This document shows, one piece after another, positions 951 through 47,793 of a stretch of DNA of 64,000 nt. The position numbers and the translations under genes are program-made. This stretch comes from Malacoraja senta (taxonomy: Eukaryota): the NCBI GenBank assembly GCA_038087875.1, contig CM075980.1, positions 14,880,001-14,944,000 on the forward strand. The letters are read 5' to 3'. The notes beneath the pieces are model-generated. The model saw nothing but the letters and a program-made list of their open reading frames with translations, was not told where the DNA came from and did no database searches. Every line of letters begins with the position of its first letter. Positions within the stretch are counted from its first letter, which is position 1.

Positions 951-1042
951 CTAACAATGAATGACTTCAGTGTACATCGAATAATTGGAAGGGGAGGATT
1001 CGGAGAAGTATATGGATGCAGGAAAGCTGATACTGGAAAAAT
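951..1042 (+). CDS. GRK3: GRK3 coding exon 8 (human numbering): [30 protein letters not shown](M), kinase Gly-rich loop
   Basis: ttttgcag acceptor ends at 950; AT|gtaatt donor; 92 nt; GxGxxG motif of GRK2/3. Confidence 0.97.
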
Positions 1043-1070
1043 GTAATTTTTTCCCTGTTTTTAGTATTTA

Positions 1071-2606
1071 CAGTGGCTTGCAAAAGTATTCATACCCCTT
1101 GAACTTTTCCACATTTGTCACGTTACAACCACAAACGTAAATGTATTTTATTGGGATTTTATGTGATAGACCAACATAAAGTGGCGCATAATTGTGAAGT
1201 GGAAGGAAAATGATACATGGTTTTCAAATTTTTTTACAAATAAAAAACTGAAAAGTGTCGCGTGCAAAAGTATTCAGCCCCCTTTACTCTGATACCCCTA
1301 AATAAAATCCAGTGCAACCAATTGCCTTCAGAAGTCACCTAATTAGTAAATAGAGTCCACTTGTGTGTAATCTAATCTCAGTATAAATACAGCTGTTCTG
1401 TGAAGACCTCAGAGGTTTGTTAGAGAACATTAGTGAACAAACAGCATCATGAAGCCCAAGGAACACACCAGACAGGTCAGGGATAAAGTTGTGGAGAAGT
1501 TTAAAGCAGGGTTAGGTTATAAACAAATATCCCAAGCTTTGAACATCTCACGGAGCACTGTTCAATCCAATATCCGAAAATGGAAAGAGTATGGCACAAC
1601 TGCAAACCTACCAAGACATGGCCGTCCACCTAAACTGACAGGCCGGGCAAGGAGAGCATTGATCAGAGAAGCAGCCAAGAGGCCCATGGTAACTCTGGAG
1701 GAGCTGCAGCGATCCACAGCTCAGGTGGGAGAATCTGTCCACAGGACAACTATTAGTCGTGCACTCCACAAATCGGGCCTTTATGGAAGAGTGCAAGAAG
1801 AAAGCCATTGTTGAAAAAAAGCCATGAGAAGTCCCGTTTGCAGTTTGCCACAAGCCATGTGGGGGACACAGCAAACATGTGGAGGAAGGTGCTCTGGTCA
1901 GATGAGACCAAAATTGAAGTTTTTGGCCTAAATGCAAAACGCTATGTGTGGCAGAAACCTAACACTGCACATCACCCTGAACACACCATCCCCACTGTGA
2001 AACATGGTGGTGGCAGCATCATGCTGTGGGGATGCTTTTCTTCAGCAGGGACAGGGAAGCTGGTCAGAGTTGATGGGAAGATGGATGGAGCCAAATACAG
2101 GGCAATCTTGGAAGAAAACCTGTTGGAGTCTGCAAAAGACTTGAGACTGGGGCGGAGGTTCACCTTCCAGCAGGACAATGACCCTAAACATACAGCCAGA
2201 GTTACAATGGAATGGTTTAGATAAAAGCATATTCATGTGTTAGAATGGCCCAGTCAAAGTCCAGACCTAAATCCAATTGAGAATCTCTGGCAAGACTTGA
2301 AAATTGCTGTTCACAGACGCTCTCCATCCAATCTGACTGAGCTTGAGCTATTTTGCAAAGAAGAATGGGCAAAAATTTCAGTCTCTAGATGTGCAAAGCT
2401 GGTAGAGACATACCCCAAAAGACTTGCAGCTGTTATTTGTAAAAAAATTTGAAAACCATGTATCATTTTCCTTCCACTTCACAATTATGCACCACTTTGT
2501 GTTGGTCTATCACATAAAATCCCAATAAAATACATTTACGTTTGTGGTTGTAACGTGACAAAATGTGGAAAAGTTCAAGGGGTATGAAAACTTTTGCAAG
2601 CCACTG
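1071..2606 (+). mobile_element. Tc1 DD34E transposon, family 1 (TIR CAGTGGCTTGCAAAAG...)
   Basis: TA at 1069-1070 and 2607-2608; about 170 bp of matching inverted repeat; inner direct repeat near 1263 in the left IR only. Confidence 0.96.
1449..2435 (+). pseudogene. Tc1 transposase pseudogene (paired-like HTH, GRPPK, WSDETK / QQDNDPKH / LNPIE, 34 residues between second D and E)
   Basis: ORFs 1449-1814, 1808-2224, 2237-2452; one frameshift near 1793, one TAA at 2222-2224, C-terminal deletion near 2433. Confidence 0.93.
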
Positions 2607-3329
2607 TAATTCCATAAGATTCAGTTATAATTTAAAAATCTTTCGACATATAAAATAATGTGTAGCATGGAGGATGGCAAGGAGATTGGAATATGAAATT
2701 GATTAACACAAGCTGAAATGATTTCACAACAGGTTATGGTATCAGCTGATGTGCATTAAATGCAGAATAATATACAAAGATGGATGTGTACTGCCTGCAA
2801 AATAGCATGGCGCCAGAATGCATTCAGGATAATAAGAAGGCTAGATTGTTAGATCTTGGAAAATACTGCATAGTTGTTCTCAGAGCCTTTTGGCTGCTTT
2901 ACAGCCGAGGAACCTAAATGTAATCTGCTCGCAGACCAAATACTCTGTCCAAGCATTCACATAAAAAACGAATTAAAACAAGAATGCCATAGCCATTACT
3001 GAAAAGTCAAGATTGTCCCTCCTAGTGCAAATCAGTGAGGATTAAGAATTGCATCTGTTAGTGATTAATGAATACCGGGGATAAGTTAGTGGCAGTGTAC
3101 GTGTTTGTCTTTGTTACAGATTTTAACTCCACATTCACGCTTACTCAATCTAAATGCTTTAAAGAAAATATAATTTTCTTCAGCAAATGAGAATTTATAA
3201 CAGCATGCTTTAGCCAAGAAAAAAGTAATACTATTTACGACCATTGAATAACTTAATTCAGTCTTGACCAAAGTGGTTTTGTGTGAGATTTCTATGTCTT
3301 TGGGAATATCATATTTGTGTCAATAGGTT

Positions 3330-4055
3330 CATCAGGGAGGGTTGCACTATTACCAAGGATGCTGCCTGGCTCGCTTTGCAGCCAGTTATAGTATTCGGGC
3401 CTTGCCGCAGTCTGCAGGTGTCCAAATGATTATACTGGGACTCAGTTTGTCCTGGTGTTGTCCCTTGGCATTCTTGATAGCTTTACGAAGATCGTCACAA
3501 GCTTTCTTGTTCCTCTCGGGGTCGTTTGACATGTATGCAACCATCTTGGCCTTCACCTGGGAATGTACCTCACGGTTCATCCATGGTTTCTGGTTAGGTA
3601 ACACTTGGATTGTCTTCTTCGGCATGCATTCCTCTACACTCTTGCTGATGAAGTCAGTCTCAGCAGTGGTGTACTCATTCAGGTTGGCCGCAGATTCCCT
3701 GAATGTGGTCCAGTCCACGGACTCAAAGCAGTCGCATAGAATGTCATCTGTATCTGCAGACCAGCACTGAACAACTTTCTATACTGAATCTTCCCGCTTC
3801 AGTTTCGTTTGTAGGCAGTGAGTAAAAGCACAGCTAGATGGTCAGATTTCCTGAAATGTGGCCAGGGAATGGAGCGGTAGGTATTTTTTATGGATGTGTA
3901 GCAGAGATCGAGGGTGTTCTGGTGTGTCAAGACACATGCTGATAGTATTTAGGTAGTACACTCTTGAGGGTGGCTAGATTGAAGTGCCCTGCTGTAATGA
4001 CCAGGGCTACGGGGTATTTTGCCTTAAGGCTATTGATAGTGGAATAAACCTCCTC
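3330..4055 (-). mobile_element. Rex-Babar-like LINE fragment (endonuclease end and EN-RT linker)
   Basis: ORF 3386-3718(-) DWTTF...PNQKPWMN...LRKAIKNAK; upstream TLDLCYT...KSDH motif. Confidence 0.75.
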
Positions 4056-5167: not shown

Positions 5168-6254
5168 GTAAGTCCAATCATATGCACGTTGTTTGCAGAA
5201 GTGTTATGTACAATTTAACATATTAAGAAAAGCTCATTGCATTCATAATTCATTCACTCCTGGTTCTCCTGGTCATCAAACCAGTCTCTCTGTTTTCTGG
5301 GAGAAAAACAGAGTCACTTTTAATCTTGTCTCTTATTTATTATGGACTAGGGTGGTTCAGTAATTCTGTTGATTGGGAGTTGTTAGATTGACACCAAGCT
5401 ATTGACAGAACAGAGTTATCTTTATGGAGCCCATCAAGTTCATTAATTTTGATCTTCCCAAGGCATTTATGTTGCCATCCCCATTTAGTTGCTGATGGAG
5501 CAGATTAGATGATGGTTAATCTAACTTTCATCAGGACCAGAAACAGTAATCTAACAGTCTCTTATTTTCCAAATGCAGCTGTTTCTCCTCCTTAGTTTGA
5601 ACAATTCACCCATGCTTTCTTTTTTAGTGAAGCAGCATGGATTGGTATGTCACAGAATGGGAGCTAAGATGATTTTTGTTGACAAAATTGTTGCAACATA
5701 TTCAGTTAGTTACTTACAGTCACATTTCAACCTCTACGCTATTTCAGGTGTAACAGCTTTCTTGGAACATTGACTGGGACATGTAATCATGTTGTTCTGC
5801 AAGTCATTGCCAGAAGAATCATATTTTATTAATATTATGTTAGAAAATAATTCCTTTATTTGAGAAAGTTTGCTGCTTATCTTTGTATCAAGGTGTAACC
5901 TAACACAAGACCAAACCTTCCCTTCCACCGACTCCTCACCCAGCCCCTGATCAATACTAACCACACAACCCCATAAAAAACCTCTGACTGATCTTACTCC
6001 CAACCTTCAACCCAAATCAGGAAACCCCACCATTCATAGCAATCACTGATTCCACTGAAAATCCCTGATTAACTGTCTCTCTGTTCCACATCAAGCTGCA
6101 ATCACCACAAATCACTAGTTCCATGTGTCTTCGACTCAGCATCCAACTTTGCCCTTGGCACAGTTATTACAAATTAGCTTATGTTGATGCTCCTGATCCT
6201 GATTGGTCCTTTGCAATCTGACATTCCCTCACAACTGTAGCACCATCCAATCAC

Positions 6255-6590
6255 CAACTGGAGAATTGTCCTGACCTACCATCTACTTCATGAGAGACCC
6301 TCAGACTATCTTTAATCTGAAGAAGGGTCTCGACCCAAAACATCACCCATTCCTTCTCTCCAGAGATGCTGCCTGTCCCGCTGAGTTTCTCTGGCATATT
6401 GTGTCTACCTTTAATCTGACCTTGCTGGACTTTATCTTGCACTAAATGTTATTCCATTTATCCTGTGTCTGTACACCGTGGACAGCTTGATTGTAATCAT
6501 GTATAGTCTTTCCGCTGACTGGATAGTACGCAACAAAAAAGCTTTTCACTGTACGTCAGTACATATAATACAAAACTAAACTAAAACTCG
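6255..6590 (+). mobile_element. LINE 3' end with (AACTA)n-like tail, interrupted by a PLE terminal fragment at 6321-6408
   Basis: CTTTAATCTGA repeated at 6310-6320 and 6409-6419 around the PLE piece. Confidence 0.6.
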
Positions 6591-6634
6591 TTAGATCACA
6601 CTAAATTCAACTGGACACCTCCTATCATGAACCA

Positions 6635-6735
6635 TTTGCCTATTTCCTTCGCTCCATTGATGCTGCCGCACCCGCTGAGTTTCTTCAGCATTTTTGTCTA
6701 CCTTCGATTTTCCAGCATCTGCAGTTCCTTCTTGA
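6635..6735 (+). mobile_element. PLE 3'-terminal fragment including tail
   Basis: matches terminal sequence ...CATTTTTGTCTACCTTCGATTTTCCAGCATCTGCAGTTCCTTCTT of the other copies. Confidence 0.8.
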
Positions 6736-7559
6736 ACATTTTATCTACTCCTTTGGAACACTACTTGGGGAACTGGATCACAGTATTCAATGTTGCACCT
6801 GTTGTTGGGCACTCCCAGAACAGTCAACTATTGCTGTGATTCAGATCAGGCCTCCCTGAACAGCCCAAGTCTGGCATTATGGTAACTTAGTTCAGCTCAG
6901 TCGTCCCCTTTCATTTATTAACTTACCGTGGATTTTTCAACAATACAGGAAGCCTACTCACAATTTTCCTTACCCTTCTCAACGCTGATCCATGACCTTT
7001 CTTACCCCCCAATCTTTGCGCCTCTTTCCTCCAACCATAGTTAATAGTAACTATCGGTTCCAAAGCATAACCCTATTGGTCCAAATCCAGTACCAATCCA
7101 GACTATGACTGCCTCTTCAATCCATGATTTGGCACCAACCCCTTCCTGCCCATCAGGCCTGTCCGCCCTGTAATGCTGTGCCACAAAGAATCTCCAGGTT
7201 AATGTTTTCAAGTTGTTGACTTCAAAGTGTTAACAAGCCAGCTTGATGTCTAATTTGTGCAGTCACTGGTTACTTTGGCAGATGAAAGTGTGAGTGTCTC
7301 ACTGCTGCTGAGCTTAATGAGCCGTGCTTTATTGCCCTGTTGAAAAAATGCAGTGCTCACTGGTAACAAAGTGGCTTTCTCATGCTCTCAATAGCCAGCA
7401 TCAAATCGAATCAAGCTGTTTCCTACTGTTATCCTAAAGCAAATTATATATATTTAAAAAAAAAGCTAAATAAGGGTGGCTCTTTCAGAATCACTGAGCC
7501 CTAAAAGCATACCATAGAATATTGTATGAGTTCATGTTTAATGTATTGTGTTTAATGAA

Positions 7560-8130
7560 TTCTTTGTGTTGTGGATAAAGAAGAACCATTGGATGTGCTA
7601 CACTCTGATTTCCAGAAAGCATTTCATAAGATGGTGCAGAAAATAAATGCGGTGTAGGAGGTGATGTATTGGCATTAATCAAAGATCGGCTGACTAACAG
7701 AAACAGAGAGTAGACATGAATATGTATGTTGCTGCTTGGCAAGATGCAATTGGCAGTATGCTATGGGTAACGTTGTGGGATTCTAACTGCTTACAATTTA
7801 TATAAAATGATTTGGATGGAAAGACTGAAGGTATAGATGCAAAATTTGTTGATGACGCAATGATGTATGGGAAAGTATGTTATGAAGACGACATCATGTA
7901 GCTAGAGAGCGATGCAGATAGGTTAACTCCACGGGGAAACATTTGGCAAATGAGATCTAATGTGGCAAAATGTGAAATTATCTATATTGGTCGGAAAAAT
8001 AAAATGTATATTTTCTAAATAGTAAGAAATTGTGAAAGTCTGAGAGCTGAAGCAACTGGATGTCCAGGTGCAGAAACATATAGGCCAACACACAAGTATT
8101 GCAGGTCATTAGGAAAGCTAACAGAATTTT
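7560..8130 (+). mobile_element. Degraded CR1 RT fragment, apparently resuming at about 9935-10160
   Basis: DFQKAF, KFVDD and WQM..NVAKCE..IG motifs. Confidence 0.65.
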
Positions 8131-8132
8131 AT

Positions 8133-9552
8133 TGTAGAAACAAGGAACTGCAGATGCTGGTTTACAAAAAAAGATACAAAGTGCTGGAGTAACTCAGTGG
8201 GTCAGGCAGAGTCTCTGGAGAATCACTTGGACCATCTCCGACATCTCCCTACCTTTTCTTGATCTCCATCATAGGAGATAGACTACCAACTAACATCCAT
8301 TCTAAATCCACTGACTCCCACAGCTATCTAGACTACACGTCTTCCCACCCTGCTTCCTGTAACGACTATATTCCCAATTCCTCCGTCTACGCCGCATCTG
8401 CGCCCAAGATGAGGTGTGTAGGAAGGAACTGTAGATGCTGGTTTAAACTGAAGATAGACACAAAAAGCTAAAGTAACTCAGTGGGACAGGCAGCATCTCT
8501 GGAGAGAAGGAATGGGTGACGTTTCAGGTCGACGAGGTGTTCCATAACCAGGACATCGGAGATGTCCTCATTCTTCAGGGAACGGGGGTTCCCCTCCTCC
8601 ATCATAGATGAGGCCCTCACTAGGGTCTCCTTGATAACCCACAGCTCCGCTCTTGCTCCCCCTCCCTCCCCTTCCCCCCAGTCATAATAGGGACGGAGTC
8701 CCCCTAGTCAACACCTTCCACCCGATCAGCCGTCTTATACAGCACATAATCCTCCAACATTTTGCCACCTCCAAAGGGATCCCACCACTAGCCACATCTT
8801 CCCATCTCCAACGCTTTCCGAAAAGACCGTTCCCTCCGCAACTACCTGGTCAACTCGTCCCTTCCCATCCAAACCACCCCCTCCCCAGGTATTTTCCCCT
8901 GCAACCGCAGGAGACGCAACACCTGTCCCTATACCTCCCCCCCTCGACTCCGTCCAAGGACCTTGACAGTCTTTTCAGGTTAAGCAGAGGTTCACTTGCA
9001 CATCCTCCAACCTCATCTACTGTATCCGCTGTTCCAGGTGTGGACTCCTATATATCGGTGAGACCAAGCGCAGGCTCGGCGATCGTTTCGCTGAACACCT
9101 CTGCTCAGTCAGACTAAACCTACCTGATCTCCCAGTTGCTAAACACTTTAACTCCCCCTCCCACACTGACCTTTCTGTCCTGGGCCTCCTCCATTGTCAG
9201 AGTGAGGCACAGTGCAAATTGGAAGAACAGCACCTCATATTTCGCTTGGGCAGCTTACACCCCAGCGGTATGAACATTGACCTCTCTGACTTCAAGTAAC
9301 CCTTGCATTCCCTCCCTCTCCATCGCTCCCCTTCCCAGTTCTCCAACCAGTCTTACTGTCTCTGACTACATTTTATCTCCGTTTGCTTTGTTAACTTCTC
9401 CCAGCTAACAATGATCTATTCTACATTTGAACTATTCTACATTCCCTTTGTCCTATGTTCACACCTTGCACTTCCTTATCTATGTATCTCCCTCTCCCCT
9501 GACATGAGTCTGAAGAAGAGTCTCGACCCGAAACATCACCCATTCCTTCTCT
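8133..9552 (+). mobile_element. Penelope-like element, 5'-truncated: RT C-terminus, linker and GIY-YIG endonuclease; inverted terminal piece 8133-8222; nested PLE end 8418-8530
   Basis: LPFLD, YLDYTSSHP, NLIYCIRCSRCGLLYIGETKRRLGDRFAEH, HFN, GMN motifs; hammerhead-like core at 9510-9537. Confidence 0.9.
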
Positions 9553-11359: not shown

Positions 11360-12917
11360 CAGTGCCCTCCATAATGTTTAGGACAAAGACCCATCACTTA
11401 TTTATTTGCCTCTGTATTCCACAATTTGAGATTTGTAATAGAAAAAATCACATGTGGTTAAAGTGCACATTGTCAGATTTTGATAAAGGCCATTTTAATG
11501 AATTTTGGGTTCACCATGTAGAAATTACAGCAGTGTTTATACATGGTCTCCCCATTTCAGGGCACCATAATGTTTGGGACACAGCAATGTCATGTAAATG
11601 AAAGTAGTCATGTTTAGTATTTTGTTGCATATCCTTTGCATGCAATGACTGCTTGAAATCTGCAATTCATGGACATCATCAGTTGCTGGATGTCTTCTCT
11701 GGTGATGCTCTGCCAGGCCTGTATTGCAGCCATCTTTAGCTTATGCTTGTTTTGGGGGCAAGTCCCCTTCAGTTTTCTCTTCAGCATATAAAAGGCATGC
11801 TCAATTGGGTTCAGATCGGGTGATTGACTTGGCCACAAGAATTTACCATTTTTTAGCTTTTAAAAATTATTTTGTTGCTTTAGCAGTATGTTTGGGATTA
11901 TTGTCTTGCTGTAGAATGAACCGCCGGCCAATGGGTTTTGAGGCATTTGTTTGAACTTGAGCAGATAGGATGTGTCTATTCACTTCAGAATTCATTATGC
12001 TACTACCATCAGCTGTGGTATCATCAATGAAGATAAGTGAGCCAGTACTTTCAGCAGCCATACATGCCCAGGCCATAACACCCCACCACCGTGTTTCACT
12101 GTGAGGTGGTATGCTTTGGATCTTGGACAGTTCCTTCTCCCCTCCATACTTTGCTCTTGCAATCACTCTGATATGTTAATCTTTGTCTCATCTGTCCACA
12201 AGAACTTTTTTCCAGAACTGTGGTTGCTCTTTTAAGTACTTCTTGGCCAACACTAACCTGGCCATCCTATTTTTGCAGCTAACCAGTGGTTTGCATCTTG
12301 CAGTGTAGCCTCTGTGTTTCTGTTCATGAAGTCTGCTGTGGACAATGGTCATTGACAAATCCACACCTGACTCTTGAAGGGTGTTTCTGATCTGTCGGAC
12401 AGGTGGGTTTTTTCCTCTTTATTATAGAGAGAATTCCTTTGTCATCAGCTGTGGATGTCTTCCTTGGCCTGCCAGTCCCTTTGCGATTAGTAAGCTCACC
12501 AGTGCTCTCTTTCTTCTTAATGATGTTCCAAACAGTTGATTTTGGTAAGCCTAAGGTTTGGCTGATGTCTCTAACAGTTTTATACTTGTTTCTCAGTCTC
12601 ATAGTGGCGTCTTTGACTTTCATTGGCACAACTATGGTCCTCATTTTGATAAACAGCAATAAAAGTTTCCAAAGGTGATGGAAAGACTAGAGGAAAGACT
12701 AGGTGCTGAGAGCTCTCTTATAGCTGCATCAAGGAGGCAATTAAACACACCTGAGTAATTACAAATGCCTGTGAAACCGTGTGTCCCAAACATTATGGTG
12801 CCCTGAAATGGGGGGACTATGTATAAACACAGCTGTAATATCTACAAGGTGAAACCAAAATGTATAAAAATGGCCTTTATTAAAATCTGACAATGTGCAC
12901 TTTAACCACATGTGATT
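11360..12917 (-). mobile_element. Tc1 family 2, copy A (TIR CAGTGCCCTCCATAATG), outer part of one TIR missing; sits within an old minus-strand CR1 (about 11190-11310 and 12920-13520)
   Basis: TA then TIR at 11360; transposase pieces MKVKDAT...GRPRK, QQDNNPKH, LNPIEH. Confidence 0.93.
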
Positions 12918-18719: not shown

Positions 18720-19444
18720 GTAGGATGAGATTGATCTAAACACAGGTATAATTTAAATTTAAGTGTAATATAAAAAGATAATATGCAGCAAGTCAAATCA
18801 CCTGCAGAAATTTGCTTGGAAAAAAAAGTAGATTTTAGTTCTTTTTTTCAGCAGAGCAAATATGGGAATGATAACCAAGTAATTTCATTATAAATGTACA
18901 GAAGATGCAAGGACTAACCAGTATTTCATTTGCAGTGAGCTATTAAATGATTTGGATGTTTTAAATTATACGATCTCAACCGGTGGTGAGGGCAGCATTT
19001 TATGCCCAGCTCTAATTATCATTGGGAAATTGATGTTGAAGTACTGCTATCTTAATGATGGAGATACTCTCCACAGCATTGTTGGGTAGATGAATCTGTG
19101 ACTTACACCTAATGATGATGAAGGAACCGGAACCTGTTTCCGAGTATTTCCATAAATGACCTGTAAACTGTTTGAGATGCTATTAGAAAATAATGGTGCG
19201 AAATACAGAAAGGTCGCAGTTGGTATGTGATGAAGAACTAAAGTGATTCTCTGGGATGGAGGTTAATGTTGTCTGTGCAAGGACTGTGTCTCAAGGTCAC
19301 TAAGCCTTTGACCCATTGTATCTGCATCTGCATTGACTATCAAGCACTTTTTTACACTAATCCCATTTCTTCCTCTCGCAATCCCATCAGCTCCCCAGTG
19401 TGCTCTCATATCAGTGGGTTGATCAAAGCTTTAGTTGCTGCCTA

Positions 19445-19812
19445 TTGAATTGAATTGAATACTTTATTGTCACATGTGACGAGTCACAGTGAAATTCTTT
19501 GCTTGCATCCGGTCCCCCCACGCCGCATCCTCCTTTGTTCCTTCCCTCACCAGCAGTGTCCTCACTTCCACGTGTCCGTCCTCGTCCGCGGTCATCGACC
19601 GCCGCACCGACCTTTCCACTATCGCTGCAGGGTCCTCTCCGGTCACCTCCGTGGCGCAGACTCAGACCCCAGCCGCGAGCTCCGTCGACCCAGGCACTGA
19701 ATGCCGCGGGCTTCGTCGACCCGCAGGCTCCACCTCCATCTCCGAACCCCGAGGTTACAGCCGCGAGGTCCAGGCTCCGACCCATGAGGCCTGAGCCGCG
19801 AGGCTCCACCGC
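19445..19812 (-). mobile_element. GC-rich retroposon 3' fragment with (ATTCA)n tail
   Basis: minus strand ends ACAATAAAGT(ATTCA)n; sharp GC/CpG contrast with the intron. Confidence 0.55.
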
Positions 19813-22394: not shown

Positions 22395-22589
22395 CTGCCC
22401 ATGAACATCAAAAGAACAGCAGAGACACCATCTGCACCCACCACCCCACCCACATACTTCGACAGCACACCAGGGACAAAATACAGCAGTCAATTGACCT
22501 ACCAACCACAGCATGCCTTTGACACATGGGAGAAAACTAGAGCGCCAGGAGAAAAAAAAACATGCATTCACAAGGAGAACAAACAACCT
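22395..22589 (-). mobile_element. V-SINE 3' half; its 5' half resumes at 25909-26000
   Basis: collinear with SINEs at 20833 and 36390, split at gagaac...|caaactc. Confidence 0.7.
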
Positions 22590-22959
22590 CAGGGTTGCCA
22601 ACATTAGGTGAGAGTTGGGAGTGAGAAATTGCGAGAAACCAAGCCTGAGGGAGCGTAGCGACCGAGGTGGGGGGGGGGAGAGGGTGTGGGAGGGGAGTGT
22701 CCCCCCTCCCATTAGTACGGAGCTTTCGCATTTTTCAGCTTGAAATTGTGCAATCTGGTGCATACTGTAGCAAGTCTTAACTTACACTTGAATGCAATAT
22801 GTATGCTTTAAATTGGATTAGCTATGAATAAGGTTAGGCTAAATTACATTCCTAATTACATTCCACAATAGAGCCATGCTTTGATCAACAGGTGCAGCAC
22901 ATGAATGATCTCAGTATATTCATGTATGGAAATCAGATTATAATCAAACACTTGGCCCA

Positions 22960-23260
22960 TGTTGACCAACCTGGATCTCACTGCACACCTGGTACTACTC
23001 CTGACCCTGATTCCAGTTGCATACCTTCTCTCATTCCTGACCCTGAGTCCAGCCTTACACCTGGCCCCCTATGCTACCGTGATAATAGCTGCTTACCTGC
23101 TTAGGTTCCCAGTGCTGAACAGTCCCATTGTCCCAGCTTTGACTGCACACCTAGTACTATTCCAGACCTTGATTCTGGATGCACACTTGGCCTTGCTCCT
23201 AGCCCCTCTGCACTGACAATATATCTGCCCCACACATAAAGCCCCATATCTGACCCCCTG
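22960..23260. repeat. Degenerate tandem repeat (ctgcacacctggt.ctactcctgaccctgattccag-like)
   Basis: recurring gcacacct and cctgaccctga motifs. Confidence 0.5.
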
Positions 23261-24727
23261 GACTTAACCTATTACATTCAAGTCCACAGGTGCTTATCTA
23301 ATGCGGTAATCTTTTATGCGGCACTTCATGGACCAAATTTTGTATAACAAAATTTACTACATCCATTGGCTTCCTTGTTATCTAAAATGCTAGTTACTTT
23401 GTCGAAGAAGTCATCCATTGGTTGAACTCAATTTCTCATCTATAAAATTATACTCACTCGGCTGTATAAGTATTCTGTTACCATTTCCTTCATTTTCCTG
23501 TCCTGAAGTCAATTTCACCCTCAATATTTTCAGTATTTTGCTGTCTTCCTCTCAGCTGGGACTTTTCCGAAATGCAAAGTCCAATAACTATATATTTAAG
23601 CAATGTTATTCTATTAAATGTGATCTTGAGAGTACATAATAATTTCTGTGGTATTCATAACACAACAATGATAAAAAATATCTTTGTTTTGATTGCACCT
23701 ACCAACATGCATACATTATTATATTACAGTTAATATGTACCGAGGGGAATTTTTTGTTCCAATGCTCCCCATTCCCAATTACTTTTACATTGAAGTGATA
23801 GAAATCCAAGTGAAGTTTAAATGGCATCTGAAAAATAAAACCTCCGGAATGGATGATATTCATTACGTGGTTGGTTGGAGTCAGTATCAGCACAATTACT
23901 ATATTAAACTTTGAATCTTCGGATGTCCTGGTTCAAGCTAAAACTAAAGACAAAAGTAACCTCCTCACACATTCCCCTGCAAGTATCTCTGTCAATCCTT
24001 TAAAATATGCCCCTTCTTTGAACAAGCTCTTAAACATCGCATCTGAATCAGTTTCCATCTGATTACACTCCTTGAGGATGTTCATCTACGTGTTCAATTA
24101 ATAAAACAATGAGATTGGGGACATTTCTATTCAACCTGTCAAAGGAATTTGGGTGGAGGGGGGGTTTAGAAATAGTCAGTGAGGTAAACAAACATAATAG
24201 TTGAGTGGAAAATGACAATAGTGTTACCTTCCCAATATTTAACTGAAGGAAATAATGGGTTATCGGGGCGGTATGTTGTTACAGACAGCCTGACATCTTG
24301 CATGTCATTTTAATATTACACTTATCTCATCCCCCCTGGATATTCCAGATTAATAAATTAAGGTTTTGTCAACTAATTACAAATCAATAACATTAGCCAA
24401 CTCCGAAACATGAAGTGCTGAGCATTGGGATCCAGACATTACGGACAACTGGGCTCAGTTCCCCTCTCACATCTGGCAGTGCTCTCTGTCTGAACCAGGG
24501 GCCACGGAGCTTTTTTTAAAGTTGGGGGGCTGAGTGATCACTGATCACTTGCCTTGGGGGTACCCGGCGAGGGAGTGGGGCAACCGAGTGGGGGGAGGGT
24601 GTGGGACATTTTGAAATTTGATGTATTAAAATCATGTTTTAGTGCATTGTAGAAGTATGATTTTAATGTTTTTTGTTTGAAGTATTTTTAAGAGGTAACT
24701 TTTTAAGGGGTAACTTTTTAAGGGGTC

Positions 24728-24950
24728 ACATTTTCCACACAAAGGGTGGTGGTGTATGAAACAAGCTGCCAGAGGAGGTAGTTGAGGCAGGGACTATCCC
24801 AACATTTAAGAAACAGTTAGACTGATACATGGATAGGACAGGTTTGGAGGGATATGGACCAAAAGCAGGTAGTGTAGCTGGGACATGTTGGCGGGTTTGG
24901 GCAAGTTGCCCCAAAGGGCCTGTTTTCACACTGTATCACTCTATGACTAC
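24728..24950 (+). mobile_element. CR1 3' end
   Basis: gaggaggtagttgaggcagg...gggcctgtttt...ctctatgact. Confidence 0.75.
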
Positions 24951-25017
24951 ATTATACCTCCACCATGCATGAATGCTTCAAAATCAATTGGTCGAGTTTT
25001 ATTGCCATATACTCAAG

Positions 25018-25360
25018 CATAGAAACATAGAAAATATGTGCATGAATAGGCCATTCGGCCCTTCGAGCCAGCACTGCCATTCAATATGATCATGGCTGTT
25101 CATCTAAAATCGGTACCTCTTTCCTGTTTTTTCCCCATATCCCTTGATTTCGGGAGCCCCAAGAGCTAAATGTAACTCTCCCTTGAAAACATCCAGTGAA
25201 TTGGCTTCCACTGCCTTCTGTGGCAGAGAATTCCACAGATTCACAACTCTCTGGGTGAAGAACGTTTGTCCTCATCTCAGTCCTAACTGGCCTACCCTTT
25301 ATTCTTAAACTGTGACCCCTGGTTCTGAACTCCCCCAACATCGGGAATATCTTTCCTGCA
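25018..25360 (-). mobile_element. CR1 3' end, inside the TIR element
   Basis: IFPMLGEFRTRGHSLRIKGRP.RTEMR; (TCTATGTT)-type tail. Confidence 0.8.
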
Positions 25361-25465
25361 GTTACAGTAAGTGAAAATCTAGCAGGCAAGCAGGATGCTT
25401 TCTCCAACCACCCCCAATTGAAGGCCACTATCTTCCACCGTTTCTACCCAGTGCTTGGTACCTAC

Positions 25466-25736
25466 TTTCAGCAGCCACGGGTTGTCCTCCAGGATGCACC
25501 GAGCCGCAGCCTGATCCATGCCGGTCACCAAGGCGAATTCGGCACAGAGACTCTAACGGCAGCGGCGCAACGCTTCCGACGCCTCCGACGGCCCGGGACT
25601 CTTGCACTGAGGCTGCTCCATGGCCGGAGCTGCAGCGAGTGACTCTCCAGCCCGGCAAACACTCGCCAGCCCGGCAAACACTCGCCAGCCCCGGCTCCCC
25701 GTCCGCATCTGCCCCCGCCGCTGCTTCTGCTTCCAT
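25466..25736 (-). pseudogene. TDP2: Captured TDP2-like exon 1 (acidic Ala/Gly-rich N-terminus and UBA-like domain start)
   Basis: minus-strand translation ...R*SLCAEFALVTGMDQAAARCILEDNPWLLK|GTAGGT; one TAG at 25553-25555; removing a 19-bp tandem duplication puts ATG 25736 in frame. Confidence 0.65.
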
Positions 25737-26809
25737 CCCTCCCTCAGCCCTGGCTCTCCAACACCCGCGGCCTATGAGATTTTGAAATTCTCATTGATCA
25801 CAGAATTTCTCATGACAGAGCGTGAGAAATTTGTGATCAGCGTGAGAGCGTGAGAATTTGTCGAAATGCGTGAGTCTCACGCTTAATACGTGAGAGTTGA
25901 CAGCCCTGCAAACTCTGCACAGACCGCACTCATGATCAGAATCAAAGCTAGATCCCTGCTGCTGTGAGGCAGAAGCTCTAAATGCTGCAGGACTGTGCAA
26001 GAAAATAATAAGACATGTTATAAAGAAGAATGTTCAATACAGGATGTGCACATCATTCTGCTCAAGGAGTATTCTTCTGCCAATCACTCTTGCCTGTTAC
26101 GTTTCTACATATGTTATGGTCGCTCATTGTCAAGTAAAGAGGCTATTGCATTGCCAGCAGCAGTAGCAAATTCACAAGGGAATGTTTACAGATGACACTC
26201 ATTGTGAATTCTTCTGTAGTGTGAAATATTTGTTTTCTTTGCAAAAGAGAAGCATGCACTCAACTAGAAGTGAAAAAAACCCTATCACAACAGGAGAAAA
26301 GAACAGGCCTCAAATGCTGGAGAAGGCATAAGGAAAGTCTAATTGCTGAGCAAGCACATTGAGGAGTGTGTGTGTAATGAAATTGGAGGAAACAGCCCAA
26401 TTCAGGTTGCTAAAATGATGAAGACTCACAATGTGTTGTGAGCTTTATCTGTCTTCATATTTTCAGATTATTTGAAATCTTTACATTATTAATTTATCAG
26501 AATTTCTGATTCACAATAACACACAGCCTCCTAAAATGAATACGCCACTCACTGAACATTCAACAGAAGAAAAAGGTCACCTTCACAGGACCATTTCCCT
26601 ACCTGATTCACCCATGCCACCATGAAACAAGTACTCGCCAAAATACACACAGTAAAGGAAAAGGCGCTTAATAATGTGATTCATGGAGTACCAGTGAACC
26701 ATGATGAGAGGACAGTCATTTATCATTAGTAGGAGAGAAACAGTTGGCCTCAGCTAAGGATCACCAGGATAAGGATTTCAAGGACTCAGACAACTCGTCA
26801 ATCAGTGCA

Positions 26810-31822: not shown

Positions 31823-33469
31823 CAGTGCCCTCCATAATGTTTGGGACAAAGACCCATCATTTATTTATTTGCCTCTGTACTCCACAATTTGAGATTTGTA
31901 ATAGGAAAAAATCACATGTGGTTAAAGTGCACATTGTCAGATTTTATTAAAGGGTATTTTTATACATTTTGGATTCACCATGTAGAAATTGCAGCTGTGT
32001 TGATACATAGTCCCCCCCCCATTTCACGGCACCATAATGTTTGGGACACATGGCTTCACAGGTGTTTGTAATTGCTCAGGTGTGTTTAATTGCCTCCTTG
32101 ATGCAGGTATAAGAGATCTCTCAGCACCTAGTCTTTCCTCCGGTCTTTCCATCACCTTTGGAAACTTTTATTGCTGTTTATCAACATGAGGACCAAAGTT
32201 GTGCCAATGAAAGTCAAAGAAGCCATTATGAGACTGAGAAACAAGAATAAAACTGTTAGAGACATCAGCCAAACCTTAGGCTTACCAAAATCATCTGTTT
32301 GGAACATCATTAAGAAGAAAGAGAGCACTGGTGAGCTTACTAATCGCAAAGGGACTGGCAGGCCAAGGAAGACCTCCACAGCTGATGACAGAGGAACTCT
32401 CTCTATAATAAAGAATAATTACCAAACACCTGTCCGACAGATCAGAAACATTCTTCAGGAGTCAGGTATGGATTTGTCAATGACCACTGTCCGGAGAAGA
32501 CTTCATGAACAGAAATACCGAGGCTACTCTGCAAGATGCATGTCACTGGTTAGCTGCAAAAATAGGATGGCCAGGTTACAGTTTGCCAAGATGTGCATAA
32601 AGGAGCAACCACAGTTCTGGAAAAAGGACTTGTGGACAGATGAGACGAATATTAACTTATATCAGAGTGATGGCAAGAGCAAAGTATGGAGGAGAGAAGG
32701 AACTGCCCAAGATCCAAAGCATACCACCTCATCTGAGAAACATGGTGTTGGGGGTGTTATGGCCTGGGCATGTATGGCTGCTAAAGGTACTGGCTCACTT
32801 ATCTTCATTGATGATACAACTGCTGATGATAGTAGCATAATGAATTCTGAAGCGTATAGACACATCCGATCTGCTCAAGTTCAAACAAATGCCTCAAAAC
32901 TCATTGGCTGGCGATTCATTCTACAGCAAGACAATGATCCCAAACAACAATATTGTGCTCTCATTGTGCTAAAGCAACAAAGGAGATTTTCAAAACTAAA
33001 AAATGGTAAATTCTTGAGTGGCCAAGTCAATCACCCGATCTGAACCCAATTGAGCATGCCTTTTATATGCTGAAGACAAAACTGAAGAGGACTAGCCCCC
33101 AAAACAAGCTAAAGATTGCTGCAATACAGGTGTGGCAGAGAAGACACTCAGCAACTGGTGATATCTATGAATCGCAGACTTCAAGCAGTTGTTGCAATCA
33201 AAGGATATGCAACAAAATACTAAACATGACTACTTTAATTTACATGACATTGCAGTCCCAAACATTATGGTGCCCTGAAATTGGGGACCATAAACACCGC
33301 TGTAATTTCTGCATGGTGAAACCAAAATGTGTAAAAATGGCCTTTATTAAAATCTGACAATGTGCACTTTAACCACGTGATTTTTTTCTATTACAAATCT
33401 CAAATTGAGGAGTACAGAGGCAAATAAATAAATGGTGGGTCTTTGTCCCAAACAGTATGGAGGGCACTG
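31823..33469 (+). mobile_element. Tc1 family 2, copy B, near full length, inserted in a CR1 3' UTR
   Basis: both TIRs (about 225 bp); TA left, CA right; ORF 32171-33043 with WTDETN and QQDNDPK, then a frameshifting insert; CR1 UTR continues on both sides. Confidence 0.96.
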
Positions 33470-36389: not shown

Positions 36390-36706
36390 AGTTTTGTTCA
36401 GTTTAGTTTAGAGATACAGCGCGGAAACAGGCCCTTCGTCCCACCGAATGTGAGCCGACCAGCGATCCCCGCACATTAACACTATTCCACACAGACTAGG
36501 GACAATTTACAATTTTACCAATCCAAATAACCTACAAACCTGCACGACTTTGGAGTGTAGAGGAAATTGGAGCTCCCAGGGAAAACCCATGCAGGTCACA
36601 GGGAGAACATACAAACTCCGCACAGACAAGCACCCTTAGTCAGGATTGAACCCTAGTCGCTGGTGCTGTAAGGCAGCAACTCTACCACGATGCCACTGTA
36701 CCGCCC
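36390..36706 (-). mobile_element. tRNA-derived V-SINE (HE1-like)
   Basis: same layout as 20833-21148; (GTTTA)n tail on the + strand. Confidence 0.85.
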
Positions 36707-37049
36707 ACCTGTGTTTTATAATATGATAAAGGATTGGCTACCTCTAACAAAGGCACTAGATTGAGAGTTAAATTAGAGTAAAGGAAATTGACCCCAGAGA
36801 GCCCTCAATCTTTTTGGCAGCTTTTTCTGAAGTCAATAATATGATTCAGTGATTTGCCACTGAACTCAAAAGTTGCCCATTATGTAATGTTCCATGAGTG
36901 GTCAGTAACTGAATTTTTGAGGAAGATTGAGAAAATATATTATTTTGTTGCATCCATAATTCTCATGTCCATGTCTGTTTTGAAGGATCATCCCTTCTTG
37001 CATGCCTCCAAATGTTGTCAGAAGTGATGTTCTTTGGAATTCTGGAAGT

Positions 37050-41830: not shown

Positions 41831-43186
41831 GTCAAGTCAAGAGAGTTTATTGTCATGTGTCCCAGATAGGACAATGAAATTCTTGCTTGCTGCAGCACAG
41901 AATATTGTAAGCATAAATACAGAACAGTTCAGTGTGTCTATATAGCATAGACCATATATATACACATAAATAAGCAGATAAAGTGCAATAGGCTGTTATA
42001 GTTCAGAGTCTTAAAGAAGGAACTGCAGATGCTGGAAAATCGAAGGTACACAAAAATGCTGGAGAAACTCAGCGGGTGCAGCAGCATCTATGGAGCGAAG
42101 GAAATAGGCAACATTTCGGGCCGAAACCCTTCTTCAGATTGATAGGGGGTGGGGAGAAGAAAGGAAAAAAGGAAAAAGGCGGAGGAGGAGCCTGAGGGCT
42201 GGGGGAGGGGAGGAGACAACCAGAGGGCTGATGAAGGGGAGGGGACAGCAAGGGCTAGCAGAATTGGGAGAAGCTAGCCCTTGCTGTCCCCTCCCCTTCA
42301 TCAGCCCTCTGGTTGTCTCCTCCTCTCCCCCAGCCCTCAGGCTCCTCCTCCGCCTTTTTCCTTTTTTCCTTTCTTCTCCCCACCCCCTATCAGTCTGAAG
42401 AAGGGTTTCGGCCCGAAACGTTGCCTATTTCCTTCGCTCCATAGATGCTGCTGCACCCGCTGAGTTTCTCCAGCATTTTTGTGTACCATAGTTCAGAGTC
42501 TGTTTGTTGGCGAGTTTAATATCCTGATGGCTGTGGGGAAGAAGCTGTTCCTGAACCTGGATGTACCAGATTTCAGGCTCCTCCTGTACCTTCTGCCCGA
42601 TGGTAGCGGAGAGATGAGTGCATGGCCAGGATGGTGTGGGTTCTTGATGATGTTGGCAGCCTTTTTGAGGCAGCGACTGCGATAGATCCCTTCGATGGTG
42701 GGGAGGTCAGAGCCAATGATGGACTGGGCAGTGGTCACAACTTTCTGCATTCTTTTCCGCTCCTGAATACTCAAGTTGCCGAACCAAGCCACGATGCTAC
42801 CAGTCAGCATGCTCTCTACTGTGCACCTGTAGAAGTTCGAGAGAGTCCTCTTTGACATACCGACTCTCCGTAATCTTCTCAGGAAGTAGAGGCGCTGATG
42901 TGCTTTCTTTATAATTGCATGAGTGTGCTGGGCCAGGAAAGATCTTTGGAAATATGCACACCCAGGAATTTGAAGTTCTTGACCCTTTCCACCATCGTCC
43001 CGTTGATATAAACGTGCTTGTGGGTCCCTATCCTACCCCTTCCAAAGTCCACAATCAGTTCCTTGGTTTTGCTGGTGTTGAGAGCTAGGTTATTGTGCTG
43101 GCACCATTTGGTCAGTCGGTCAATCTCACTTCTATTCTCTGACTCGTCACCATCAGTGATTCGTCCCACAACAGTGGTGTCGTCAG
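41831..43186 (-). mobile_element. Rex-Babar LINE, 5'-truncated (RT C-half and 3' UTR), interrupted by a PLE palindrome
   Basis: DDTTVVG, LNTSKTKELIVDF, FKFLG, FYRCTVES, RFRNSFFPTAIR; (CTTGA)n tail. Confidence 0.9.
42012..42487. mobile_element. Near-perfect palindromic PLE insertion
   Basis: ATAGTTCAGAGTCT at 41998-42011 and 42488-42501; arms 42045-42259 and 42273-42487; 13-nt loop. Confidence 0.93.
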
Positions 43187-45203: not shown

Positions 45204-47145
45204 CGACCTGTATCTTTACTTCAGCTCCCTATGGGCCTCCACCAGCGACTCCACTGATCCTCCCTCCCCTCCGTCTACCAGCGGGCTGGAGCCGTTCGCT
45301 CACCTGAATTCCAGGCTCAGCACCGGGCTCACAGCCTCCATGCTGCAGACTCCAACACCACGTGGTCTGACTCTCCAGGGTCCAACTGCTCCCCCCCCCT
45401 CCTACAGGGCACCTGAGTCATGATGGGCCTTCTCCCACACCCCACCCATACAATAGTCCTTGTGCCCCCCTCCTCTCTGAACACCCACCATCCCCCCACC
45501 AGACCTCGCCTCGGCCTCTGTCCACTCCCCAGCCCTTCTCTGACCCCGACCCCCACCCTTTTCGTGTCTTCACTATCCCCCCTGACCACCCCCTTTCCGA
45601 TACGGAATGGTCTGTCCTCAACAGAGGCCTCACCTTCATTCCCCTCCGCCCCCACCTCAACGAGTCCCGTGTCTGCCACGACATAGAGCCTTTCTTCCGT
45701 CGCTTCCTCCTCCGTTCCTTTTTCTATGGGAAGGAATCCACACCACCCAGTGATGACCTTTTCTCCCGTCTCCACTGGTCCCCCTCCTCTTGGACTTCCC
45801 CAAAATGGCTTTTTACCCTCTCTAGACCTATTTATTTCTAACGACCGGCGTCACATCAATCGTCTCAACTTTTCCACTCCCCTTACCTACTCTGACCTCA
45901 CCCCCTCTGAACGTACAGCCCTCCGCTCACTGCAGCAACCCAGACATTATAATCAAACCCGCCGACAAGGGAGGTGCCTTGGAAGTCTGGCAAGCCAGCT
46001 CTCGTACACCTCCTCCTACCTATCCTTGGACCATGATCCCACGGATGAGCACCAGGCCATAATCTGACAGACCATTTCTGATGTCATCACTTCTGGCTGT
46101 ATGTCATTCCACAGCCTCCAACCTTATCGTTTCCCAGCCCCGCACATACCAGTTTTATCTACTCCCCAAAATCCATAAATACAACTGCCCTGGCAGACCC
46201 ATTGTTTCTGCCTGCTCCTCTCCCACTGAAATTATTTCCCTGTACCTCGACTCCATCCTATCCCCCATGGTCCAATCTCTCCCGACCTATGTCCAAGATA
46301 CCTCACATGTCCTTCGTCTCTTTAATGACGTCCACTTTCTGAGCCCCCACTACTTCATCTTTACTTTGGACGTTCAGTCACTTGACACCTCCATCCCCCA
46401 CCAGGAAGGCCTTAAAGCTCTTAATTTCTTTCTCAACGGCAGAACCATCCAATTTCCCTCTACTAACACTCTACTCCGCCTAGTGGAGCTTGTCCTCACC
46501 CTTAACATCTCCTTCGACTTCTCCCACTTCCTCCAAGCAGCTTCCTGCAAAGACTATCCCCTACTCCCAATTCCTCTGTCTATGCCGCATCTGTGCCCAA
46601 GATGAGGCATTCCATGCCAGGACATCCGAGATGAGGCATTCCATACCAGGACATCCTCACTCATGTCTCCTCGGTACCCCGCAGCTCCGCCCTGGCTCCC
46701 CCTTCCCCCTAGATGCAACAGAGACAGTCTCCCTAGTCCTTACCTTTCACACCATTAGCTGTCACATACAGCCCAGTGGAATGAATATTGATTTCTCTAA
46801 CTTCAGGTAGCCTGGCATTCCCTCTCTCTCTCTATCTCTCCCCCACCCAAGTCGCACCAGGTTCTCGTTTTCAACCAACAAAGAGCTAACAATGGCCTGT
46901 TTCCTTTATCATCGTAACTTTTTGCATATCTTTCATTCATGGTTCTTTATCGCTCTACTTCCCAACATCTCCCATCGTCTATATCTCTTGTTTTCCTTAT
47001 CCCTAACCAGTCTGAAGAAGTGTCTCGACCCCGAAACGTCACCCATTCCTTCTCTCCAGAGATGCTGCCTGTCCCGCTGAGTTACTCTAGCTTTTTGTGT
47101 CTATCTTTAGTTTAAACCAGCATCTGCAGTTTACTTCCTACACAT
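45204..47145 (+). mobile_element. Penelope-like element with RT N-half, large internal deletions and intact 3' end
   Basis: LNRGLTF.P, IIKPADKGG, FYLLPKIHK..CPGRPIVS, TLDVQSL.TSIP; core at 47012-47040; tail ...CCAGCATCTGCAGTT. Confidence 0.88.
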
Positions 47146-47793
47146 CATGCATTTAAATGATGTGTTCTAAATATTTTTGTATTATTTATGATCTTATGTA
47201 TCCCTACAAGATCTTTTCACCGATACTTAGTTTCAAGACTGATAAGCTGAAGTATATCTAGCTATCCCTCATTACTCAAATCTCTAAAGTGGGAATCATG
47301 TTTGTTCCTTTTGCATCATCAGATCAAAATCTGATCAGAACTGGAAACCTATACTAGGTGTGGTCCGATCAAAGCCTTTTATAATCTGATCATGCTGCTT
47401 TCATCCTGTAGTGTTGTCTTGATGAAATAATGGATACATTTATTTGTCTCTTTTCACAGCCTCATCATTTCCCATGAACATATGATTTTGTTTTTTATGT
47501 GTAATTGCTGTTATTGAGCAAGCATAACAAGGGACTGCAAGCAGCAGTTATTGTTTTGATAGTGATCAGGCATAAATAATGTCCAGAATACCAAGAGCTT
47601 AGCTGGGGTCCTTCACAACGTGTGTCTTTTAGATTCATTTGAATTATCTGATATTTAACTTTTCAAGCCAAATACATCAGCAGCAGCAACAAACTATGCT
47701 GTTAGTAAATGCGTGGGTAAATGGCAAAATACAGTGCCCTCCATAATGTTTGGGACAAAGACCCCTCATTTATTTATTTTCCCCTGTACTCCA

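What the first reader, a model, noticed from the sequence alone, without database searches (positions are those of the whole stretch)
22590..25908. Pack-TIR-like transposon carrying a captured TDP2-like first exon with its splice donor
Seen: the CpG-rich block 25361-25772 translates on the minus strand, in a frame the ORF track misses. After removing one copy of a 19-bp tandem duplication (CCAGCCCGGCAAACACTCG) it reads MEAEAAAGADADGEPGLASVCRAGESLAAAPAMEQPQCKSPGPSEASEALRRCR*SLCAEFALVTGMDQAAARCILEDNPWLLK, followed directly by GTAGGT and intron-like sequence. It lies just inside one end of an element with 13-bp imperfect TIRs and GTGAGA subterminal repeats that splits a V-SINE. Knowledge: the pattern LCxEFAxVxxxDxAxAxCxLxxNxW aligns without gaps to the TDP2 N-terminal UBA-like domain (human LCVEFASVASCDAAVAQCFLAENDW), and from memory TDP2 exon 1 ends in phase 0 three residues after that W, as here. 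Inference: DNA-level capture (the intron start is kept, so not a retrocopy) of a CpG-island first exon of a DNA repair gene. If the family is multicopy it disperses an ATG + UBA-like module + donor cassette and could yield antisense or small RNAs against TDP2.
Basis: partly seen in the sequence, partly recalled or inferred. Interest (0 to 1): 0.85.

Follow-up and report, generated by a model that had tools for sequence, protein, structure and literature searches.

The report
Transposon family carrying TDP2-like first exon
This is a dead copy of a very abundant cut-and-paste DNA transposon that carries, just inside one end, a CpG-rich stretch and a first exon resembling that of the DNA-repair gene TDP2; it is real, but gene-fragment capture is a known kind of event and the source gene could not be located here.

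Summary
Region 22590-25908 is one insertion. Its flanks are the two halves of a single SINE copy, joined by a 6-bp target-site duplication (CAACCT/CAAACT). It ends in 13-bp inverted repeats and clustered GTGAGA motifs.

On the minus strand, just inside the right end, lie a CpG-rich leader, an ATG in Kozak context, a 52-codon exon and a GT donor. The best solved-structure match is the human TDP2 UBA domain (E 4e-5 with a profile of copies); worm TDP2 is second.

Other copies from public contigs begin at exactly the same terminal base with unrelated flanks. They lack this copy's TAG stop, 19-bp duplication and 10-bp deletion.

Whole-genome runs of four differently labelled organisms hold thousands of copies (rough estimate 10^3-10^4). 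The exon is no better conserved than the neighbouring non-coding DNA, so copies decay neutrally.

Capture from the host TDP2 gene is inferred, not shown. No parent locus could be searched for, and the rival that this is the first exon of an autonomous element's own gene is not excluded. Splicing and transcription were not shown.

The scan noted this family in at least 16 other places of this genome. It is a new, unusually amplified member of a known kind (Pack-TIR).

The parts
22450..22589 (-). Left half of the SINE copy that the element split
   Evidence: Aligns colinearly to the intact SINE copy at 36480-36710 up to reference position 138.
22584..22589 (.). Left copy of the 6-bp target-site duplication (CAACCT)
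   Evidence: The joined flanks carry 6 extra bases relative to the intact SINE.
22590..22602 (+). Left terminal inverted repeat CAGGGTTGCCAAC
   Evidence: Multicopy depth starts here (33 in bin 22400-22599 against 1040 in bin 22600-22799, run X15).
22603..22650 (+). Left subterminal region with GTGAGA, GTGAGA and GCGAGA
22651..24689 (.). Internal non-coding body of the element, itself multicopy
   Evidence: No Pfam family at significant level in the ten stop-free segments scanned, nine of 70-90 aa and one of 50 aa. Contigs of other organisms cover it at 95-98% identity with depth similar to the ends (table 8, records 26-29).
24690..25360 (.). Very abundant retroelement-tail repeat in two inverted arms (about 24721-24950 and 25020-25360). 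It belongs to the family rather than being a later nested insertion.
   Evidence: Inverted pairs I1, I2 and I6. Depth 1.5e5-6.8e5. The arm next to the intron-like stretch is present at the same junction in L001 and L003.
25361..25465 (-). Intron-like 105 bp following the exon, starting with the GT donor (25465-25464) and ending in ...CTGCAG
   Evidence: It is 90-98% identical between copies.
25466..25621 (-). TDP2-like first exon: ATG in GCCATGG context, 52 codons, with a private TAG at 25555-25553
   Evidence: Over 98% of depth in four runs has C at 25555(+), giving GAG Glu.
25622..25780 (-). CpG-rich leader with an upstream in-frame ATG (25736). It carries a private 19-bp duplication (25642-25691) and a private 10-bp deletion near 25777-25780.
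   Evidence: (loose ends at 25776/25780 and 25647-25693).
25781..25895 (-). Right subterminal region with clustered GTGAGA/TCTCAC motifs and a 28-bp tandem unit
   Evidence: It is 87-90% identical to L001 and L002.
25896..25908 (-). Right terminal inverted repeat CAGGGCTGTCAAC
   Evidence: L001 and L002 start being homologous exactly here, with unrelated flanks. In run X3, 52 contigs end at 25908 with heterogeneous continuations (agreement 0.36).
25909..25914 (.). Right copy of the target-site duplication (CAAACT)
25909..26000 (-). Right half of the split SINE copy
   Evidence: Aligns to the intact copy from reference position 132 onward.

Best explanation
Region 22590-25908 is a decayed copy of a non-autonomous cut-and-paste (TIR) DNA transposon family.

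How it moves (inferred): a transposase supplied in trans recognises the CAGGG...CCCTG termini and the GTGAGA subterminal repeats, excises the element and reinserts it with a 6-bp target-site duplication. Here it landed in a SINE.

What it carries: an ancestor of the family acquired, at the DNA level, a host fragment of about 410 bp. This comprises a CpG-island-like 5' region, the first coding exon of a TDP2-type gene (ATG, N-terminal tail, first two helices of the UBA-like domain), the splice donor and the first 105 bp of intron 1. Transposition then spread this module to thousands of genomic sites in several related organisms.

State of the copies: they decay neutrally. This copy has a private nonsense codon, a 19-bp duplication and a 10-bp deletion and encodes nothing.

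Shown: the insertion as a unit, the ends, the family, the copy number order of magnitude, the UBA/TDP2 similarity, and the private lesions.

Inferred: host origin of the module, the transposition mechanism and the superfamily.
For: - One insertion with a TSD inside a SINE.
- TIRs unique in the window and a subterminal motif cluster.
- Independent copies L001 and L002 start at the same terminal base with unrelated flanks, and share the leader, exon, donor, 105-bp intron-like stretch and retroelement-tail junction.
- 5,619-9,192 contigs per run lie on 580 bp. Summed word depth over the exon is 2e4-9e5, against 3.5-69 for individual long contigs. Depth collapses beyond 25908. The whole 3.3 kb is multicopy, while the unique flanks have depth 0-41.
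- The best PDB match is the human TDP2 UBA domain: E 6e-4 for this copy, 1.1e-4 for P0002, 4.4e-5 for the profile. C. elegans TDP2 is second and p47 is weaker or absent.
- The P0002 exon passes the Pfam UBA_4 gathering score (26.6 against 21.8).
- The start codon to 'LC' distance (24 residues) is similar to human TDP2 (27, from memory).
- No transposase-like domain inside the element.
- The exon (89-94% between copies) is not better conserved than the intron-like stretch (90-98%) or the retroelement tail (94-97%). CpG transitions make up a third of the substitutions in L001 and L002.
Against: - No parent TDP2 locus was found or could be searched for. phmmer over 1.84 billion representatives found only another copy of the element.
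- The TDP2 match rests on about 30 residues at 47% identity.
- The module sits exactly where the first exon of a transposon's own gene would sit: just inside one end, pointing inward.
- Both ends together were seen only at this locus. The search with the left-end ORF found nothing.
- A second multicopy context for the module exists (L003 type), so the family history is more complex than one capture.
Confidence: 0.62

Rival explanations
1. The exon is not captured. It is the first exon, with promoter and 5' UTR, of the gene of the family's autonomous master element, whose protein has an N-terminal TDP2-type UBA-like domain. This element is an internal-deletion derivative that kept the 5' end of that gene.
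For: The module lies directly behind the subterminal repeats and points inward, as in autonomous DNA transposons. The consensus ORF is open with a good Kozak context and a GTAAGT donor in most copies. No parent locus is known.
Against: No protein in 1.84 billion representatives joins this exon to further exons. There is no transposase remnant in the 3.3 kb. The intron-like stretch runs after 105 bp into a retroelement tail in all copies. No known transposase has a TDP2-type UBA domain (own knowledge). No note of this scan links TDP2 with a transposase (weak evidence).
Confidence: 0.18
2. The module was captured from a host gene, but from another UBA_4-type gene (NSFL1C/p47, FAF, UBXN or DCUN1D type) or a lost TDP2 paralogue, rather than from TDP2 itself.
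For: p47 appears as a weak hit (E 1.4-1.6). Pfam and Atlas only say UBA_4/UBA-like. Only human and worm TDP2 UBA sequences were available for comparison.
Against: Human TDP2 scores 22.6-26.8 bits against about 13 for p47, and p47 drops out with the profile while worm TDP2 stays second. Both cysteines of the LC...C pattern are shared with TDP2 only.
Confidence: 0.12
3. The UBA/TDP2 resemblance is a chance ORF in GC-rich transposon sequence, and there is no gene-derived module.
For: The match is short. This copy is below the Pfam threshold (18.2 against 21.8).
Against: The less decayed copy passes the threshold. E 4.4e-5 against PDB with a profile, with two TDP2 orthologues on top. ATG, Kozak context, an open consensus frame and a consensus donor coincide with the domain boundaries.
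Confidence: 0.05
4. This is the native, possibly decayed, TDP2 exon 1 of this genome, with a transposon end nearby by accident.
For: CpG-island-like composition and first-exon anatomy.
Against: The exon lies inside a unit that splits a SINE with a TSD. The exon exists in thousands of copies. A regex scan for remembered TDP2 catalytic motifs (a weak screen) found none convincing in the window.
Confidence: 0.01

Closest known systems
Pack-TIRs of metazoans (Tan et al. 2021, Nat Commun 12:4280, PMC8277862)
   Same: A non-autonomous TIR DNA transposon with a host-gene fragment between its ends, acquired at the DNA level (intron start kept). One of their multicopy cases also carries a 5' UTR fragment (CAPSL in hAT-N8_XT).
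   Different: They found 370 Pack-TIRs in 100 animal genomes, of which only four were multicopy; the example they describe has three copies. Here there are thousands of copies. Their definition rests on an identified parental gene, which is missing here. The module lies next to one end rather than replacing the centre.
Pack-MULEs of rice and other plants (own knowledge; cited in PMC8277862)
   Same: TIR elements that carry and amplify host gene fragments, often GC-rich 5' parts of genes, and can give chimeric or antisense transcripts.
   Different: They belong to the Mutator superfamily with 9-10-bp TSDs and long TIRs. They usually have low copy number per family and are plant elements.
Helitron families of vespertilionid bats that amplified the NUBPL promoter, 5' UTR and first exon (Pritham and Feschotte 2007; own knowledge, not checked here)
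   Same: A promoter plus first exon plus donor of a housekeeping gene spread to thousands of sites by a DNA transposon.
   Different: Those are rolling-circle Helitrons, which capture by end bypass and have no TIRs or TSDs. Here it is a TIR element with a 6-bp TSD.
Human TDP2 N-terminal UBA-like domain (PDB 6q00/6q01; residues 26-63 according to PMC5778467)
   Same: 15 of 32 aligned residues are identical, including LC-EFA-V...D-A-A-C-L..N-W-..E. It sits at the same place behind a short N-terminal tail.
   Different: Only about the first 30 of the 38 domain residues are encoded, so the third helix is missing. There is no catalytic EEP domain anywhere in the element or the window.

Membership tests
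Pack-type (Pack-TIR) transduplicating DNA transposon | Terminal inverted repeats and a target-site duplication bounding the unit | tested here: met
   13-bp TIRs, 11 of 13 alike. 6-bp TSD inside a colinear SINE. Other copies end at the same base.
Pack-type (Pack-TIR) transduplicating DNA transposon | No transposase inside (non-autonomous) | tested here: met
   Ten stop-free segments (nine of 70-90 aa, one of 50 aa) of 22590-25360 gave no significant Pfam family. Shorter remnants were not excluded.
Pack-type (Pack-TIR) transduplicating DNA transposon | Internal fragment derived from a host gene whose parental locus is identified elsewhere in the genome | not testable with these tools
   Only protein-level similarity to TDP2 of human and worm. 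There is no host-genome search. phmmer found only another copy.
Pack-type (Pack-TIR) transduplicating DNA transposon | DNA-level acquisition (intron or promoter sequence kept, no poly-A) | tested here: met
   The GT donor and a 105-bp non-coding continuation are shared by all four copies.
TDP2 UBA-like domain (Pfam UBA_4, PF14555) | Score at or above the Pfam gathering threshold | tested here: inconclusive
   This copy scores 18.2 against 21.8. Sister copy P0002 scores 26.6 (met) and P0001 19.9.
TDP2 UBA-like domain (Pfam UBA_4, PF14555) | TDP2 rather than other UBA_4 proteins as nearest relative | tested here: met
   Human TDP2 is first and worm TDP2 second in PDB, with p47 weaker. No fish or shark UBA_4 proteins could be compared.
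TDP2 UBA-like domain (Pfam UBA_4, PF14555) | Intron position shared with TDP2 exon 1 (phase 0, three residues after the Trp) | not tested
No gene structure of TDP2 was obtainable.
hAT superfamily (suggested by other first-stage notes) | 8-bp target-site duplication | tested here: not met
   The TSD at this locus is 6 bp. Some hAT families have shorter TSDs (own knowledge), so this does not exclude hAT. The superfamily is left open.
hAT superfamily (suggested by other first-stage notes) | Autonomous partner with a hAT transposase sharing the termini | not testable with these tools
   No genome-wide search was available.

The most novel reading that the evidence does not exclude
The family is by far the most amplified Pack-TIR known in an animal (10^3-10^4 copies, against the four multicopy cases (one described with three copies) in the 100-genome survey). 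Many of its copies still act as CpG-island promoters with an ATG and a strong donor. They would then seed chimeric first exons in host genes and produce antisense or small RNAs that touch the real TDP2.
Probability: 0.12. Interest if true: 0.7.

Novelty: new member of a known kind. Interest (0 to 1): 0.42.

Why it matters
If the host origin is confirmed, this is a vertebrate example of a TIR transposon that spread the promoter, start codon and splice donor of a DNA-repair gene to thousands of loci. That is orders of magnitude beyond the multicopy Pack-TIRs described so far in animals.

Practical consequences:
- The family creates thousands of false CpG islands and false 'TDP2 exon 1' hits that can mislead gene annotation.
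- It offers a natural experiment on how often a dispersed promoter-exon-donor cassette is exapted.

For this particular copy nothing functional is expected.

Tried and rejected
- Native TDP2 locus: rejected by the SINE split and TSD, the copy number and the absence of TDP2 catalytic motifs in six-frame translations (the motifs were remembered, so this is only a weak screen).
- Other copies of either end inside the window: none.
- phmmer of the 57-aa stop-free piece against 1.84e9 representatives: only another copy, P0001.
- Word-indexed protein search with P0001: three ORF calls, all copies of the element. The length filter prevents reaching full-length TDP2 from an exon.
- Left-end ORF search: no candidates.
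- Atlas look-alikes: only generic UBA_4 clusters.
- Metagenome scan with a conserved 20-mer: one chance hit in a 68% GC bacterial contig with no further similarity.
- RNA evidence: the runs guessed to be RNA behave like low-coverage DNA (the tool's own remark). The contigs listed across 25466 (records 15, 23, 32) are unspliced, and no joint at 25466 was among those listed. Transcription and splicing therefore remain untested, not refuted.
- Literature: the human TDP2 exon 1 boundary was not found. TSD lengths of superfamilies were not in the Repbase paper.
- Earlier-findings look-up by sequence: blank.
Full report
**What is in the sequence.**

On the minus strand the CpG-rich block reads as follows:
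- a leader (25780-25622);
- ATG 25621 in a GCCATGG context;
- 22 codons (MEQPQCKSPGPSEASEALRRCR);
- TAG at 25555-25553;
- 29 codons (SLCAEFALVTGMDQAAARCILEDNPWLLK) ending at 25466;
- then GTAGGT and non-coding sequence.

An upstream ATG at 25736 would be in frame but for a 19-bp tandem duplication (TRF 25642-25691, 2.6 copies). The block has GC 0.67 and CpG observed/expected 0.85.

**The 3.3 kb is one insertion.**

- The sequences left of 22590 and right of 25908 align colinearly to an intact SINE copy elsewhere in the window (36480-36710).
- The left flank ends at reference position 138 and the right flank starts at 132, so six bases are duplicated (CAACCT / CAAACT, one mismatch).
- The unit ends in CAGGGTTGCCAAC and the reverse complement of CAGGGCTGTCAAC. 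These are the only two such sites in 64 kb.
- GTGAGA/TCTCAC motifs, 28 in the whole window, are packed 5 within 74 bp at the right end and 2 within 20 bp at the left end.
- A 6-bp TSD is not the usual 8 bp of hAT. I leave the superfamily open.

**It is a family, and a very large one.**

phmmer of the stop-free piece against 1.84 billion representative proteins returned a single hit, P0001. This is a prokaryote-style ORF call on an ENA contig that reads through the exon into the intron-like stretch. A word-indexed search added P0002 (a Logan contig) and P0003 (ENA).

Their contigs (L001-L003) align to the window at 86-90% identity:
- L001 and L002 become homologous at exactly the terminal base of the right TIR (window 25908), and their flanks are unrelated to each other and to the window.
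- All three share the leader, the exon, the donor (GTAAGT or GTAGGT) and the 105-bp intron-like stretch. L001 and L003, whose contigs reach that far, also share the junction to a retroelement tail at window 25360.
- That tail is therefore part of the family and not a later nested insertion.

Laying contigs of four whole-genome runs of differently labelled organisms on 25361-25940 gave the following:
- 5,619-9,192 contigs were laid per run at 80% identity or more.
- Summed word depth over the exon was 2e4-9e5, against 3.5-69 for individual long contigs.
- Depth fell sharply beyond 25908, to 1,000-3,900 in the bin that spans the end and 160-2,300 in the next.
- In run X3, 52 contigs ended at 25908 with heterogeneous continuations (agreement 0.36).

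The tool warns that summed depth is not a copy number. The ratio and the number of distinct contigs nevertheless both point to thousands of copies (order 10^3-10^4).

In four smaller runs the whole stretch 22600-25999 is multicopy, while the unique flanks have depth 0-41. This is the only evidence, beyond this locus, that both ends and the body belong together.

**What is private to this copy.**

- At 25555 more than 98% of the depth in all four runs has C on the plus strand. This makes the codon GAG (Glu), so the TAG is private.
- The 19-bp duplication and a 10-bp deletion near 25777-25780 are also private.
- The family consensus differs further at 25479 (CCG to CAG) and 25468 (AAA to GAA). 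The consensus exon ends ...EDNQWLLE|GTAAGT and is open from the upstream ATG.

**What the exon is.**

| Query | Best PDB hit | Next hits |
|---|---|---|
| 29-aa piece of this copy | human TDP2 UBA domain 6q00, E 6e-4 | C. elegans TDP2 E 0.13; p47 E 1.4 |
| Less decayed P0002 exon | human TDP2, E 1.1e-4 (15 of 32 identical, including both cysteines) | p47 E 1.6 |
| Profile of the copies | human TDP2, E 4.4e-5 | worm TDP2 second; p47 gone |

- Pfam UBA_4 is passed by P0002 (26.6 against the gathering score 21.8) but not by this copy (18.2).
- The Atlas gives only generic UBA-like clusters.
- Human TDP2's UBA-like domain is residues 26-63 (PMC5778467). The exon covers the equivalent of about 25-55, so the third helix is missing. 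The cassette is not a complete folding unit.

**Selection.**

Between the four copies the identities are:
- exon: 89-94%;
- intron-like stretch: 90-98%;
- retroelement tail: 94-97%;
- leader: 83-91%;
- subterminal region: 87-90%.

A third of the substitutions in L001 and L002 are CpG transitions. The exon is not protected. The copies decay like methylated neutral DNA.

**Captured or its own?**

Two readings fit the anatomy.

(a) Capture: an ancestor of the family picked up the 5' end of a host TDP2-type gene at the DNA level. In favour:
- a TDP2-specific best hit;
- CpG-island composition typical of a housekeeping promoter;
- no transposase remnant in the element;
- no predicted protein anywhere that joins this exon to other exons.

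(b) Own gene: the exon is the first exon of the autonomous master's own gene. In favour:
- its place right behind the subterminal repeats and pointing inward;
- the lack of a known parent.

The protein databases hold only three ORF calls of a family with thousands of copies, so their silence about a parent carries no weight. I put (a) at about 0.6-0.65 (plus 0.12 for capture from another UBA_4 gene) and (b) at about 0.18.

An extra complication is a second multicopy context. L003 loses homology at about 25772. In run X2, 23 contigs break at 25766 into the same foreign sequence.

**How it works.**

Inferred from the general mechanism of TIR transposons:
- a trans-acting transposase binds the termini and subterminal GTGAGA repeats;
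- it cuts the element out and integrates it with staggered cuts six bases apart;
- the passenger module rides along.

For this copy no function is expected. Whether intact copies fire as promoters or donate their exon to host transcripts was not testable. The runs guessed to be RNA look like DNA, and the contigs listed across 25466 (records 15, 23, 32) are unspliced.

**Comparison and novelty.**

The closest described kind is the metazoan Pack-TIR (PMC8277862). That survey found 370 cases in 100 genomes, only four of them multicopy, the one described in detail with three copies. Functionally the nearest parallel I know is the bat Helitron family that spread the NUBPL promoter and first exon (own knowledge).

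This is a new and unusually amplified member of a known kind, provided the host origin holds.

First-stage readers of this scan noted 'TDP2 exon 1 in a TIR element' in at least 16 other places of the same genome. That agrees with the copy number but is not independent proof.

**Surroundings.**

By eye, the stop-free segments of 95 aa or more look mostly TE-derived: Tc1/mariner-like and LTR-retrotransposon-like pieces, with no evident host exon. None was scanned against Pfam.

Noticed in passing
window 24690-25360: Two inverted arms of an extremely abundant retroelement tail (depth 1.5e5-6.8e5 in small runs) form a palindromic pair. The arm next to the intron-like stretch is shared by other copies of the transposon, so it predates the amplification. 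It resembles the palindromic Penelope insertions another note describes at 42012-42487.
   Followed up: partly
L003:1-110 and window ~25766-25772: A second multicopy context of the TDP2-like module. Homology breaks at about 25766-25772 and continues into unrelated sequence (23 contigs in run X2 share it). This is either a subfamily with an old insertion or a second carrier element.
   Followed up: partly
window 36480-36710: An intact copy of the SINE that the element split. It was useful as the empty-site reference. The SINE family was not identified (the label 'V-SINE' is untested).
   Followed up: partly
window 19400-19800: Another CpG-rich block (GC up to 0.67, CpG observed/expected about 1.0) with no obvious gene. 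It was not examined and is not similar to the TDP2-like module by BLAST.
   Followed up: no
window 22646-22691 and 24568-24606: A 45-nt G-rich direct repeat (GAGGGAG...ACCGAGGTGGGGGG...GAGGGTGTGGGA) occurs once near the left end and once in the body of the element. Its meaning is unknown.
   Followed up: no
window 1437-2221, 12327-12686, 32132-33040, 52722-53243; 46063-51723: Long stop-free segments that by eye look like several Tc1/mariner transposase copies and a gypsy-like LTR retrotransposon. The window looks like TE-rich non-coding DNA. They were not verified with Pfam.
   Followed up: no
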